NCBI RefSeq assembly: GCF_001194135.2
Contig: NC_068985.1
Span: forward strand, 108,547,382-108,595,200
Direction of reading: 5' to 3'
Source: Octopus bimaculoides
Lineage: Eukaryota
Length of the DNA: 47,819 bases
Below, one piece after another: positions 27,148 through 36,109 of this stretch. Below the pieces are notes generated by a model that had not been told where the DNA came from, made no database searches, and worked only from the letters and a program-made list of their open reading frames with translations. Each line of letters starts with the position of its first letter. The stretch's first letter is position 1. Made by a program: the position numbers and the translations under genes.

Positions 27148-27186
27148 ATGATGATTACGATGGTAATTATGATGATGATGATAGTA

Positions 27187-27326
<140 letters not shown>

Positions 27327-27691
27327 TGCATTCATTTTTCCACGAGTGAATAGAACGAGTTACAATGAGAGTTTGTGTGGGAGATTGCATTCAAAGAGAA
27401 GTATAAGAGATGAGGGGGCTAATAAAATAAAAAAAATGTACATAGAATACAAAATAAGTGAACATATCTATGATGCAATTCCCCTTGATACAAGATAATC
27501 TTCACCCAGAGCCAGTCAAGGAATCCCACATATCGAGGTTCATCATGATCACAAAGAGTACAAGATAAAATATAATTGTCCCTGCTTTGCGGTAGAGAAG
27601 AAAATCTGAGAGGATTGCATTAGTTGATTCCATCAACACCAGTATACAACTGAAAAGTTTAAGATCTTTCGTCTATGGCTGGTAGTAGATC

Positions 27692-27872
27692 TCTCTTCAG
27701 AATACATTATTTACATCATTACATTATTTATATTTGACTGATATTTATCCTCATCTTGTTTGTTGTTTAACAACAAACAAGATGAGGACAAATATCCGTC
27801 AAATGTAAATAATGTAAATAATGTACATAATTCCTCATCTCTTAAATATAGAACTATATTCTCTTCAGAATA
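27692..27872 (+). mobile_element. Centre-deleted palindromic PLE pLTR element with 13-bp TSD (no ribozyme)
   Basis: Direct repeat tctcttcagaata at 27692-27704 and 27860-27872. The inside matches both outer arms and the 3' tail (aattcctcatctcttaaatatagaact) of the 30788-31159 element, joined at gttgtt-taacaac. Confidence 0.85.
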
Positions 27873-30014: not shown

Positions 30015-30842
30015 CATAAACACGCATACATGTATGTATGTATGTATGTATGCATGTATACATGCAGATATATATGTTTATATATGAATTATTTTTTAGG
30101 CTATTTTACATTATTTTGCAGTATATTTGACGATATAAAAAATGTTTATGAATATATATAGACACACGCATACACACATACATACACACACTCACACACA
30201 CACAACAAACAAACATATTTATACATGAATGTATATGTGTATTAGTTGTTTTTTCATATCATTTGTCAGACATGATATGCTGTAGTCATGCTCTTATGCT
30301 ACAACACGCATATTGTATGTCAAGACTTCGTTGCAAAGATTTACGATCGATAGATACAACATTGTTGCATATCAAGATATCATTTCAAGAAAACCTCACA
30401 ACACGCATATTATATGACCAGATGTCGTTTCGAAAGCATGATGTTACAACAGATATCGTACAGATATTGTATATAAAAATAAACATTCCCAAGGAATGCA
30501 ATAAAGAAATACTCAATAAATATATTAATAGGAGAAAGTGAACTAACTTTACCGAATATGAATGCATACCACTTAGACTACCGCACCTAAAACGTTCAGA
30601 TACTTTCGAATAAATTTCATATCAGGAAACTACTGGAGTAAGCCCAAAACCTTCTTTAGCACATGTACTGGCAATTAGCCTTTATTGACTCCGATATAAA
30701 AACATCATTAATCCGCTATGGTATCAAAACATGGAACTTACTCCAAATTTGGCTTTTAAGATTTAATAGCAAACACTAAATTCTCTACATTATTTACATT
30801 ATTTACATTTGACGGATATTTGTCCTCATCTTGTTTGTTGTT

Positions 30843-30888
30843 AACACAACGTTTCGGCTGACATACCCTCCAGCCTTCGTCAGGTGTC
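30843..30888 (-). ncRNA. Minimal type I hammerhead ribozyme (left-arm copy)
   Basis: Exact reverse complement of 31025-31070. Confidence 0.8.
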
Positions 30889-31024
30889 TTGGGGAAATTT
30901 CGAACCTGGGTTCTCATTCCTAACGATGTTACTATTATTATATTATTATTATTATTACTATTATTAATAATATAATAATAGTAACATCGTTAGGAATGAG
31001 AACCCAAGTTCGAAATTTCCCCAA

Positions 31025-31070
31025 GACACCTGACGAAGGCTGGAGGGTATGTCAGCCGAAACGTTGTGTT
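31025..31070 (+). ncRNA. Minimal type I hammerhead ribozyme (right-arm copy)
   Basis: GACAC-CUGACGA-A-GGCUG(GAGGGUAUGU)CAGCC-GAAA-CG-UU/GUGUU: stem I GACAC:GUGUU, stem II 5 bp, palindromic ACGU stem III, predicted cleavage after 31065 (GUU). Confidence 0.8.
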
Positions 31071-31249
31071 AACAACAAACAAGATGAGGACAAATATCCG
31101 TCAAATGTAAATAATGTAAATAATGTAAATAATTCCTCATCTCTTAAATATAGAACTGTACTAAATTCTCTATTTAAAATAATGCCTTCAAAACAAAACT
31201 GCATGTGTGTGTGTGAAGTGTGTGCACGCGCTTGTGTATGTATCTGCAT

Positions 31250-31452
31250 TTGTTTCCCACCTCCACTTAACAACCAGTTTCGGTTTCCTTACGTTCCTGT
31301 AACCTGGCAGTTCGACAAGAGATACCTATAGAATAAGCAGTATCAAGCTTAAAAATAAACACTGGGTTCGATTTGTTCTGAAAAACACCCATCGAGATGG
31401 TGCTTCAGGGTGGCCGCAGACCAATAACTGAAACAAGTAAAAGTCAAAAGAA
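31250..31452 (+). mobile_element. Family-A SINE 3' half
   Basis: acgttcctgtaacctggcagttcg...ctgggttcgatttg...ggccgcagaccaataactgaaacaagtaaaag. Confidence 0.75.
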
Positions 31453-31858
31453 TAACATATCCTCTTGTAGAGTTTGGGTTCACTAAGGTCACACGGTGAT
31501 GCGTCAGATAATCGCTTGTAACAGAGCGGTGCTGTGATAAATAGCCAACCGAGTAAAATTACTACCCGGAACTAAATTATTCTGGTCTGTCTGTCTCAAA
31601 ATGTTGAGGACGGGGAGGTGCGAGCACCGGAAAGGGCAGTGCTATAATGGGTAGCGCCAACCTGATACCTGCTGAGGCTTGATCAAGCCCCAGCTGGGTC
31701 GTGTGGGCGAGGGTGTCCAGAAACATTACCGATGCTGTGTCGAGGAGCATCACAACATGACGTGTGGAAAAACTATACTCATTAATGACGGGAGGGAGCG
31801 AGCTGTCGTAGCAGACAAGGGTTCGTTGAAGAATTGTAAGGGAAAGAAAGAGGGCAAC

Positions 31859-35884: not shown

Positions 35885-36090
35885 CTTTGTGTCTGTGTTT
35901 GTCTCTCACCACTGCTTGACAACTGGTGTTGGTGAGAGTACGAACCCCGTAACTTGGCGGTTCAGCAAAAAAGACTGATAAAATAAATACCAGGCTTTAA
36001 AAGATAAGTACTGGGGTCGATTCATTTGACTAAAAATATTTCCAGGTGGTGCCCCAGCATGGCCGCGGTCAAATGACTGAAACAAGTAAA
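35885..36090 (+). mobile_element. Family-A SINE 3' half
   Basis: ccccgtaacttggcggttcagcaaaa...tactggggtcgattcatttgac...ccccagcatggccgcggtcaaatgactgaaacaagtaaaag. Confidence 0.85.
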
Positions 36091-36109
36091 AGATAAAGAG
36101 AGCTTCCTT

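What the first reader, a model, noticed from the sequence alone, without database searches (positions are those of the whole stretch)
30775..31172. Mobile 372-bp palindrome carrying an identical hammerhead ribozyme on each strand
Seen: 162-bp inverted arms with one mismatch, an 18-nt AT spacer, a 13-bp TSD and a right-only 3' tail. Each arm holds GACAC-CUGACGA-A-GGCUG..CAGCC-GAAA-CG-UU/GUGUU, arranged head-to-head. Established: Penelope-like element pLTRs carry minimal type I hammerheads with a palindromic, loopless stem III that cleave as dimers, and inverted pLTR arrangements occur in PLEs. Inference: this ORF-less unit inserted as one piece, recently (near-identical arms). A read-through transcript from either side would fold into a 162-bp hairpin that sequesters its own ribozyme and could feed ADAR or Dicer. 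Transcripts starting in the AT-rich centre would instead release active ribozyme from both strands. That would make it a compact sense/antisense ribozyme switch that may itself be a transposing unit.
Basis: partly seen in the sequence, partly recalled or inferred. Interest (0 to 1): 0.85.

Follow-up and report, generated by a model that had tools for sequence, protein, structure and literature searches.

The report
Head-to-head Penelope-type hammerhead retroelement insertion
The palindrome is real, but it is the ordinary scar left when a Penelope-type retroelement carrying a hammerhead ribozyme inserts as two inverted copies in one event in an octopus genome; it is not a self-mobile ribozyme switch.

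Summary
Arms 30788-30948 and 30965-31125 mirror each other with one mismatch around a 16-nt centre. A perfect 13-bp target-site duplication flanks the unit, and only the right arm carries a 34-nt extension (one extra 9-mer plus a 26-nt tail). Each arm carries a complete minimal type I hammerhead of the kind published for Penelope-like elements (PLEs), although Rfam does not detect it.

The "mobile palindrome" reading fails. A second insertion of the same family at 27705-27859 has its own 13-bp duplication and the same right-only tail. Its palindrome centre lies elsewhere, its arms are about 63 nt, and it has no hammerhead. Related loci show further, different junctions, and solo copies end exactly where the inverted arms end (...TAATG).

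This matches published PLE biology: inverted 5'-truncated copies, a one-sided tail, and two adjacent reverse-transcription start sites with cleavage and extension of both DNA strands. The duplicated ribozyme is therefore a passenger of the insertion mechanism.

The host is an octopus; the only named relative is from Octopus bimaculoides. No reverse-transcriptase ORF was linked to the family, so it may be a short non-autonomous element. This is a new member of a known kind, of low to moderate interest.

The parts
30775..30787 (.). Left copy of the 13-bp target-site duplication ACTAAATTCTCTA.
   Evidence: D7, 100% identical to 31160-31172
30788..30964 (-). Inverted (left) copy of the element's 3' module, read on the - strand. 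Its outer end stops at ...TAAATAATG after two 9-mer units and has no tail. The innermost 16 nt (30949-30964) most simply continue this arm's (TAA)n tract.
   Evidence: the phase argument for the centre is inference from the sequence
30843..30888 (-). Minimal type I hammerhead motif on the - strand. The predicted cut lies between 30848 and 30847.
30949..30964 (.). It is 16 nt, AT-only apart from one C, and partly self-complementary.
30965..31125 (+). Sense (right) copy of the same module. It mirrors 30788-30948 with one mismatch (31007).
31025..31070 (+). Minimal type I hammerhead motif: stem I GACAC/GUGUU, core CUGACGA, an extra A, stem II GGCUG(G)/(U)CAGCC, GAAA, and palindromic CG. The predicted cut is after U 31065.
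   Evidence: features compared with PMC4209133
31126..31159 (+). Right-only extension: a third 9-mer unit (31126-31133) plus the 26-nt tail TCCTCATCTCTTAAATATAGAACTGT (31134-31159). This is the stretch between the proximal and distal 3' ends of the family.
   Evidence: the same tail occurs in copy 2 and in P0001, P0011, P0020 and P0024 as ...SS(S)LKYRT
31160..31172 (.). Right copy of the 13-bp target-site duplication.
   Evidence: D7
27692..27704 (.). Second insertion of the family: left copy of its own 13-bp target-site duplication TCTCTTCAGAATA.
27705..27767 (-). Second insertion: inverted arm of about 63 nt. Its outer end is ...TAAATAATG after three 9-mer units, it has no tail, and it has no hammerhead.
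27769..27859 (+). Second insertion: sense arm starting at AACAACAAAC, 5 nt 3' of the predicted cleavage site, so it lacks the hammerhead. It ends with the 28-nt tail at 27832-27859. A single T (27768) forms the centre.
27860..27872 (.). Second insertion: right copy of its 13-bp target-site duplication.

Best explanation
The unit is the product of one Penelope-type (PLE) target-primed retrotransposition event in an octopus genome. It is not a functional device.

The family's RNA 3' module reads, 5' to 3': a leader of about 40 nt, the min-hammerhead, an AC-rich stretch (AACAACAAACAAGAUGAGGAC...), the repeat (UAAAUAAUG)2-3, and a tail of 26-35 nt.

Proposed steps:
1. The element's endonuclease nicked the two DNA strands 13 bp apart, which produced the target-site duplication.
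2. The sense (right) copy was reverse-transcribed from the distal start site, so it carries the tail.
3. The inverted (left) copy starts at the proximal site (...UAAUG), so it lacks the tail.
4. The two copies were joined head-to-head by a template switch or by self-priming of the cDNA. In copy 1 this happened inside a (TAA)n tract. In copy 2 it happened 5 nt past the ribozyme cleavage site.

The two 'identical ribozymes on opposite strands' are therefore passengers of the inverted duplication. The insertion is most probably dead on arrival. If transcribed by read-through it would form a perfect 161-bp hairpin.

The element is probably a short non-autonomous relative (retrozyme-like or SINE-like) mobilised by a PLE enzyme, rather than the truncated pLTR of an autonomous PLE. 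I hold that sub-claim at about even odds.

Shown: the anatomy, the second copy, the relatives and the motif. Inferred by analogy with published in-vitro work: the enzymology, the order of steps and any ribozyme activity.
For: 1. Anatomy: one perfect 13-bp duplication around two inverted copies and a one-sided extension.

2. An independent insertion 3.3 kb away has a different 13-bp duplication and the same one-sided tail. Its palindrome centre lies about 105 nt further 3' in the element, and it has no hammerhead.

3. The outer ends of both inverted arms fall in the same phase of the 9-mer repeat...TAAATAATG followed by TA of the target.

4. Solo relatives L068 and L069 end at the same ...GTAAATAATG with no tail.

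5. In a distant family (L067) the inverted arm ends at ...CCTTAATG without a tail. The sense array there ends with a 35-nt tail, and the whole is flanked by a 13/15-matching direct repeat.

6. L065 carries the tail on both arms and has an asymmetric centre.

7. Published PLE features match:
- an inverted 5'-truncated copy next to the insertion and a 30-40-bp tail at one end (PMC8557442);
- inverted pLTRs with a TSD, a 31-bp tail on one of them, and palindromes at the junction interpreted as self-priming (PMC3846280);
- a PLE protein that cleaves and extends both strands and starts reverse transcription at two adjacent internal sites, with the tail being the sequence between them (PMC11167929);
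- 'dual min-HHRs ~100-700 bp apart on opposite strands' in Schistosoma (PMC4209133).

8. The hammerhead meets every sequence criterion for PLE min-HHRs.

9. Host: the only named relative is an Octopus bimaculoides protein, and another relative maps to GCA_001194135.2.
Against: - No reverse transcriptase or GIY-YIG ORF was found in the window.
- No such ORF was linked to this family. The exhaustive protein search gave 72 short ORFs and none with RT. The link to PLE enzymes therefore rests on the insertion signature and the ribozyme type only.
- The near-equal arm lengths (they differ by 16 nt in copy 1 and 1 nt in copy 2) are not predicted by two independent cDNAs. They need a template switch or fold-back, which has not been demonstrated for PLEs.
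- A 1-nt centre cannot come from a simple intramolecular hairpin primer.
- Rfam does not recognise the hammerhead, and no cleavage data exist.
- Only two copies from the source genome could be examined. The other loci are from other samples or species.
Confidence: 0.8

Rival explanations
1. One reading: the 372-bp palindrome is itself a non-autonomous mobile unit that transposes as a palindrome and acts as a sense/antisense ribozyme switch.
For: A single TSD flanks the whole palindrome, and the arms are nearly identical. Both strands encode an intact min-HHR.
Against: Four head-to-head insertions examined at the DNA level have four different junctions: window copy 1, window copy 2, L065 and L067. 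Copy 2 has no ribozyme at all. Solo and tandem copies of the same module exist. A palindromic RNA template would be a perfect hairpin (-285 kcal/mol) and a poor template. A single min-HHR is reported as inactive on its own (PMC4209133).
Confidence: 0.04
2. The unit is a 5'-truncated pLTR of an autonomous Penelope/Poseidon- or Neptune-type element, not a short non-autonomous element. Apart from the nature of the source element, this is the same mechanism as the best explanation.
For: In PLEs the hammerhead lies in the pLTR, and the pLTR plus tail can include the start of the ORF (PMC3846280; PMC11167929). Frame +2 of the arm is open from ATG 30996 through the tail.
Against: The exhaustive search with that frame found only short ORFs of 34-321 aa, none with RT. 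Homology among four copies begins near 30990-30997, which suggests a unit of about 170 nt. The related family in L067 is a 310-nt ORF-less unit with 129-nt tandem sub-units.
Confidence: 0.4
3. The unit is a foldback/MITE-type DNA transposon with terminal inverted repeats.
For: Long inverted arms, a flanking direct duplication and no ORF.
Against: The termini are asymmetric, with a 34-nt extension on one side only. The inverted region has a variable inner boundary between copies. Solo one-armed copies end at the same internal site. Tandem arrays occur in a relative. From general knowledge, a 13-bp TSD is not typical of known cut-and-paste superfamilies.
Confidence: 0.03
4. The unit is an assembly or sequencing fold-back artefact.
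For: The window is a gap-rich draft with 14 runs of N totalling 5205 N. PMC8557442 states that PLE tandem/inverted structures cause problems in short-read assemblies.
Against: The flanks are unique and carry a perfect TSD. One arm has an asymmetric tail. There is one arm-to-arm mismatch. A second, differently sized palindrome of the same family has its own TSD. No gap lies within 800 bp.
Confidence: 0.02
5. The unit is a co-opted hairpin-RNA locus (an endo-siRNA or miRNA-like precursor, or an ADAR substrate). This would be compatible with the insertion origin.
For: The predicted hairpin is perfect over 161 bp. Rfam hairpin-miRNA models score it at E down to 1e-32, though far below their gathering scores.
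Against: Those Rfam hits are to unrelated plant MIR families and reflect hairpin shape only. There is no expression data, no conservation evidence, and the insertion is young.
Confidence: 0.05

Closest known systems
Minimal type I hammerheads (min-HHR) of Penelope-like elements (Cervera & de la Pena 2014, PMC4209133)
   Same: CUGANGA and GAAA boxes; an unpaired nucleotide between A9 and G10.1; the G10.1-C11.1 pair; helix II of 5-6 bp; helix I of 5 bp; helix III reduced to A-CG-U with palindromic 15.2-16.2. That paper also describes pairs of motifs 100-700 bp apart on opposite strands.
   Different: The host is a cephalopod, and my search found no paper linking hammerheads with Octopus bimaculoides. 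Here the motif could not be placed in a pLTR next to an RT/EN ORF. Activity is untested.
Canonical PLE insertion architecture: inverted 5'-truncated copy plus one-sided tail plus TSD (Arkhipova et al. 2013, PMC3846280; Craig et al. 2021, PMC8557442)
   Same: Head-to-head inverted copies; a tail on one of the inverted ends (26-34 nt here against 30-40 bp published); a short TSD (13 bp here; 8-10 bp in the Adineta examples); a palindrome at the inverted junction; severe 5' truncation.
   Different: There is no ORF and no direct pLTR between the inverted copies, so the whole insertion is just two 3' modules. The TSD is 13 bp in both window copies.
Poseidon PAc of Anolis carolinensis, in-vitro mechanism (Frangieh et al. 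2024, PMC11167929)
   Same: Two alternative 3' ends separated by the tail. Both DNA strands are apparently used. The hammerhead lies a few tens of nucleotides upstream of the start sites (51-94 nt here, about 85-92 nt in PAc). An AC-rich stretch lies just 3' of the ribozyme.
   Different: Here the pattern is only inferred from genomic scars. There is no sequence homology to PAc. The start region is a 9-mer repeat rather than the described AC-rich stem-loop.
Non-LTR retrozymes: tandem hammerhead repeats of animals expressed as circRNAs (Cervera & de la Pena 2020, PMC7229834; Li et al. 2026 preprint, 10.64898/2026.07.22.740005)
   Same: Short ORF-less units carrying a type I hammerhead and thought to depend on PLEs. 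A related family found here (L067) does form 129-nt head-to-tail units.
   Different: The window copies are inverted, not tandem, so they hold no pair of same-sense ribozymes and cannot release a monomer or a circle. Retrozymes mostly carry canonical hammerheads with loop-loop contacts, not min-HHRs.

Membership tests
PLE minimal type I hammerhead (PMC4209133) | Conserved boxes CUGANGA ... GAAA in type I order, with H17 after U16.1 | tested here: met
   CUGACGA at 31030-31036, GAAA at 31058-31061, U16.1 at 31064 and U17 at 31065. The same motif is mirrored on the - strand.
PLE minimal type I hammerhead (PMC4209133) | [quoted passage not shown] | tested here: met
   A at 31037. Only the 'extra=1' form of the descriptor matched.
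PLE minimal type I hammerhead (PMC4209133) | G10.1-C11.1 pair closing a longer-than-usual helix II | tested here: met
   GGCUG(G)/(U)CAGCC forms 5-6 bp with an 8-10-nt loop. The published range for Schistosoma is 7-8 bp and for Drosophila virilis 6 bp.
PLE minimal type I hammerhead (PMC4209133) | Helix III absent or minimal, with palindromic 15.2-16.2 (dimer-forming) | tested here: met
   A-CG-U at 31061-31064. ACGU is self-complementary.
PLE minimal type I hammerhead (PMC4209133) | Short helix I (4-5 bp) | tested here: met
   GACAC/GUGUU, 5 bp including one G-U pair. It forms in the minimum-free-energy fold of 31021-31075.
PLE minimal type I hammerhead (PMC4209133) | Self-cleavage as a dimer or with protein assistance | not testable with these tools
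   This needs in-vitro transcription. Published min-HHRs cleave poorly, and not at all as single motifs.
PLE minimal type I hammerhead (PMC4209133) | Covariation supporting the helices within the family | tested here: inconclusive
   Stem II has U-A in the octopus family and C-G in the L067 family. Codon-level counts (R,R 13; W,R 8; W,Q 5; R,Q 5) are equally well explained by CpG decay. Older copies are simply decayed.
Rfam hammerhead families (Hammerhead_1, _3, HH9, HH10, _II) | Covariance-model score at or above gathering, or any hit at E<=10 | tested here: not met
   There were no hammerhead hits. There were also none for the intact tandem motifs of L067, so these models do not cover hammerheads without helix III.
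Penelope-like element insertion | Short target-site duplication flanking the whole complex insert | tested here: met
   A perfect 13-bp duplication flanks each of the two window insertions. L067 has a 13/15 match.
Penelope-like element insertion | Inverted 5'-truncated copy adjacent, head-to-head, with variable truncation | tested here: met
Penelope-like element insertion | Optional tail of about 30-40 bp at one end only, with two alternative 3' ends | tested here: met
   The right-only extension is 34 nt in copy 1 and about 28 nt in copy 2. Solo copies end at the proximal site. L065 has the tail on both sides.
Penelope-like element insertion | Element encodes a telomerase-like RT plus a GIY-YIG endonuclease | tested here: not met
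   No such ORF lies in the window or among 72 protein-level relatives. The source genome could not be searched, so an autonomous partner may exist elsewhere. For this reason the unit is filed as 'PLE-type insertion of an HHR-bearing element', not as an autonomous PLE.
Non-LTR retrozyme | Head-to-tail tandem repeats of about 150-450 bp, each with a type I hammerhead | tested here: not met
   The window copies are inverted, not tandem. A relative in L067 does show 2.7 tandem units of 129 nt.
MITE / foldback DNA transposon | Symmetric terminal inverted repeats with constant termini | tested here: not met
   The termini are asymmetric, and the inner boundary varies between copies.

The most novel reading that the evidence does not exclude
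The position of the head-to-head junction may not be random. It could be set by the ribozyme itself. In this reading, reverse transcription runs to, or nearly to, the 5' end of hammerhead-cleaved RNA (copy 2 starts 5 nt 3' of the predicted cut), or it switches template at the stem II hairpin, as several protein-level relatives suggest. Genomic palindrome centres would then record in-vivo hammerhead processing in the PLE cycle, which RNA-seq has so far failed to show. Young perfect hairpins of this family might also be a recurrent source of long dsRNA in a lineage with very active ADAR editing.
Probability: 0.08. Interest if true: 0.55.

Novelty: new member of a known kind. Interest (0 to 1): 0.25.

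Why it matters
For genome annotation, 'ribozyme palindromes' of this kind are insertion scars of Penelope-type retrotransposition. They should not be called MITEs, miRNA precursors or ribozyme devices.

For PLE biology, the two insertions in this window, together with the relatives retrieved, offer natural in-vivo junctions from a mollusc. These junctions fit the model of two start sites and priming on both strands, a model so far based on one lizard element in vitro. They also suggest that the hammerhead plus 3' module is shared by short ORF-less elements. A genome-wide census of junctions would be a cheap way to test the self-priming and template-switch models.

No new kind of system is implied.

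Tried and rejected
- Rfam at gathering score on the whole window, at E<=10 on 1 kb, and at E<=10 on one arm gave no hammerhead. It returned only generic hairpin hits to plant MIR families far below threshold. I reject these as shape matches.
- ARAGORN on the window found no tRNA. I dropped my suspicion that GGTTCGAAAT in the arm is a pol III B box, because the homologous stretch in the L067 family is not that unit's box-like region.
- An IMG/VR scan with the core pattern returned 58 phage contigs. Inspection shows complete phage hammerheads with a real helix III. They are convergent and not related to this element.
- A metagenome scan with a 20-mer conserved in all four arms gave six chance 20-mer matches and no homology.
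- Pfam on ten non-repetitive ORFs of the window gave nothing, so there is no RT/EN and no gene context.
- The word-indexed protein search gave only one hit. The exhaustive HMMER search was what opened up the family.
- Codon-level covariation of stem II is explained by CpG decay and is not used as evidence.
- The U3-A8 variant core pattern gave 17 matches against 8.35 expected. None is associated with repeats, so I did not pursue it.
- The idea that the arm's open frame is the N-terminus of a PLE ORF is not supported, because no long relatives were found.
Full report

Yes. The repeat finder reports an inverted repeat with arms 30779-30954 and 30959-31134, 176 nt long and 97% complementary. It also reports a perfect 13-bp direct repeat, ACTAAATTCTCTA, at 30775-30787 and 31160-31172.

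A base-by-base mirror comparison shows perfect complementarity from 30788/31125 inwards to 30948/30965. There is one mismatch (30906 C versus 31007 A) and a 16-nt centre at 30949-30964.

The right arm runs on for 34 nt that the left arm lacks. These are a third copy of the 9-mer TAAATAATG-type unit and the 26-nt tail TCCTCATCTCTTAAATATAGAACTGT at 31134-31159.

The nearest assembly gaps are more than 800 bp away.

**2. Is the hammerhead real?**

Each arm reads GACAC-CUGACGA-A-GGCUG-(10 nt)-CAGCC-GAAA-CG-UU|GUGUU. This lies at 31025-31070 on the + strand and 30843-30888 on the - strand.

- The core pattern occurs only there in 47.8 kb, against 0.06 expected by chance.
- I wrote a descriptor from the published criteria: boxes, an optional extra nucleotide, G10.1-C11.1, helix II of at least 4 bp, a palindromic 15.2-16.2 insert, U16.1, H17, and helix I of 4 bp. 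It hit only these two places and hit nothing in 300 Markov-simulated windows.
- The two hits are one event duplicated, so the motif alone is modest evidence on a genome scale. The context is what makes it convincing.
- The minimum-free-energy fold of 31021-31075 forms helices I and II.
- Rfam finds no hammerhead at any threshold tried. It also misses the intact tandem motifs of the related L067 family, so the negative result reflects the missing helix III.

Cervera and de la Pena (PMC4209133) list the features that distinguish PLE min-HHRs. [quoted passage not shown] All are present here. They also report that single motifs show no detectable cleavage and that dimers cleave weakly.

**3. A second insertion in the same window**

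BLAST of the arm against the window found a second copy. Read out and aligned, it consists of:

- a 13-bp duplication TCTCTTCAGAATA at 27692-27704 and 27860-27872;
- an inverted arm at 27705-27767;
- a single T at 27768;
- a sense arm from 27769;
- the same tail at 27832-27859, on the right side only.

Its right arm differs from that of copy 1 at 2 of 95 positions. However, its palindrome centre is gttgtt-T-aacaac, 5 nt 3' of the predicted cleavage site, so this copy contains no hammerhead at all.

The outer ends of both inverted arms fall in the same phase of the 9-mer repeat...TAAATAATG, followed by TA of the target. Copy 1 stops after two units and copy 2 after three.

There are therefore two independent events with the same termini logic and different inverted junctions.

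**4. Relatives elsewhere**

A word-indexed protein search with the open frame of the arm found one protein, A0A0L8FV75 of Octopus bimaculoides. This identifies the host lineage.

An exhaustive HMMER search found 72 short ORFs of 34-321 aa, none carrying a reverse transcriptase. They fall into two families:

- An octopus-type family, MRTQVRNFPKTPDEGWRV.QPKRCVNNKQDEDKYPSNVNNVNN..SSSLKYRT, from Logan contigs. One member is an annotated isoform in GCA_001194135.2.
- A distant family, ...SRVRQTPEEGWRTYRPKRCGNNNKDEDNSPKTLNDKNHQASSQKFRQL, from long ENA contigs, often matching two or three times in tandem.

The conserved peptide P-[DE]-E-G is simply the translation of C-CUGANGA-A-GG.

Several ORFs read from an antisense arm straight into a sense arm, at different points. 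Examples are P0011, P0062, P0069, P0064, P0029 and P0002.

At the DNA level:

- L065 is an old head-to-head copy. It has the tail on both sides, an asymmetric centre and decayed cores.
- L068 and L069 are solo sense copies that end at ...GTAAATAATG with no tail. Both have broken hammerheads.
- L067 has a 13/15-matching flanking direct repeat. It has an inverted 310-nt copy whose outer end is ...CCTTAATG without a tail. This is followed by 2.7 sense units of 129 nt that start at GAAACG and end in a 35-nt tail.

The proximal end ...TAATG and the distal tail are thus conserved features across two families. The head-to-head junction differs in all four insertions examined.

**5. What it is and how it arose**

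These features are the published signature of Penelope-like element insertions:

- Inverted pLTRs with a 9-10-bp TSD, a 31-bp tail on one of them, and palindromes at the inverted junction attributed to self-priming (PMC3846280).
- In vitro, a PLE protein cleaves and extends both strands. It starts reverse transcription at two adjacent internal sites, with the tail being the sequence between them. Hammerhead cleavage is not required for insertion (PMC11167929).
- Dual min-HHRs 100-700 bp apart on opposite strands were already noted in Schistosoma.

I therefore read 30775-31172 as one PLE-type event:

1. Nicks staggered by 13 bp.
2. A sense copy begun at the distal site.
3. An inverted copy begun at the proximal site.
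4. The two copies joined head-to-head.

The arms are almost equal in length. They differ by 16 nt in copy 1 and by 1 nt in copy 2. This argues for a template switch or fold-back of one cDNA rather than two independent cDNAs.

Read on the - strand, the 16-nt centre of copy 1 continues the arm's (TAA)n tract in phase. I therefore assign it to the left arm (inference). A (TTA)n cDNA end could fold back on itself.

The 1-nt centre of copy 2 cannot be an intramolecular hairpin primer. It needs a jump between strands.

These mechanistic steps are inference. The literature itself calls them unresolved.

**6. Autonomous or not?**

No RT/EN ORF is in the window or among the relatives. Homology among four octopus-type copies starts near 30990-30997. 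The distant family is a 310-nt ORF-less unit with 129-nt tandem sub-units.

This leans towards a short non-autonomous element mobilised in trans, close to the "non-LTR retrozymes are PLE derivatives" idea. I could not search the octopus genome, so this stays at about even odds.

**7. What it does now**

Most probably nothing. Dispersed older copies have lost core positions. P0001 back-translates to changes at C11.1, C15.2 and stem I, and L065, L068 and L069 are also decayed. The intact cores here therefore reflect youth, not selection.

A read-through transcript would fold into a 161-bp perfect hairpin (-285 kcal/mol). It would contain one sense ribozyme fully paired to its complement. A transcript starting at the centre would contain one lone min-HHR, which is the inactive configuration.

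The Rfam hits to MIR families are shape matches far below threshold.

**8. Verdict**

The identification as a Penelope-type hammerhead, and insertion in one recent event, are supported. The "mobile palindrome" and "ribozyme switch" readings are not.

This is a new member, from a cephalopod, of a known kind. Its value is mainly as a clean natural example of PLE insertion junctions.

Noticed in passing
window 27178-27331: This is a strand-switching microsatellite. (ATT)n turns into (AAT)n, giving a palindrome of about 75-nt arms at 85-96% complementarity. It lies about 370 bp upstream of the second insertion. The centre of copy 1 (30927-30985) has the same (TTA)n to (TAA)n switch on a smaller scale.
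   Followed up: partly
window 27768-27775 versus 31066-31075: The second copy's arms begin at (T)AACAAC, 4-5 nt 3' of the predicted hammerhead cleavage site GUU|GUGUUAACAAC. This could be coincidence, or near-run-off on ribozyme-cleaved RNA. Only a genome-wide census can test it.
   Followed up: partly
L001-L058 (IMG/VR contigs): 58 viral contigs carry CUGANGA-N-GGCUG...CAGCC-GAAACG followed by a full helix III and a GUC cleavage site. These are complete phage hammerheads with the same extra nucleotide after A9 (mostly U). Some have a loop 2 (GGAGGGAUAC) resembling the octopus one (GAGGGUAUGU). I treat them as convergent.
   Followed up: partly
L067 9717-10393 (ENA ERZ21867824 ctg121048l): A distant relative family has a 310-nt ORF-less unit. 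Its 5' part looks pol III-like by eye (TGGCGTAACGG ... GGTTCAATTC), but ARAGORN and Rfam call no tRNA. Here it is inserted as an inverted full copy plus 2.7 tandem 129-nt hammerhead units, which is a retrozyme-like array. The host animal is unknown.
   Followed up: partly
P0030 (NCBI GCA_001194135.2, gene range >130 kb): An annotated Octopus bimaculoides protein isoform of 94 aa contains GEGWRVYQPKCCVNNKQDEDKYPSK. This is a translated copy of the hammerhead module, apparently exonised in a gene with an EF-hand_2 Pfam hit.
   Followed up: no
L069 86-268: The solo copy in L069 follows directly on an ORF fragment resembling the N-terminal part of a non-LTR (LINE) reverse transcriptase (...DQIHNFWLNRLTEVQEIL...). 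The resemblance is judged from memory only. It could be an insertion into a LINE or a chimeric read-through.
   Followed up: no
window 31173-31800; also 35946-36092 and 4576-4621: The right flank holds a (TG)n run and then a dispersed repeat with weak copies elsewhere in the window (73-85% identity). From memory, its sequence (..cgttcctgtaacctggcagttcgacaagagatacctatagaataagc..) resembles an abundant octopus SINE-like repeat.
   Followed up: partly
whole window: The window is 32.6% GC, has 14 runs of N (5205 N in total) and is extremely rich in microsatellites such as (CA)n, (TA)n, (AAT)n and (CTAT)n. No protein-coding ORF was recognisable, and Pfam was negative on the ten best candidates.
   Followed up: partly
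window 31134-31142 versus 30821-30829: The first 9 nt of the tail (TCCTCATCT) equal the reverse complement of AGATGAGGA inside the arm. The tail could therefore pair with the arm in the RNA, 45-60 nt apart. This may be chance.
   Followed up: no
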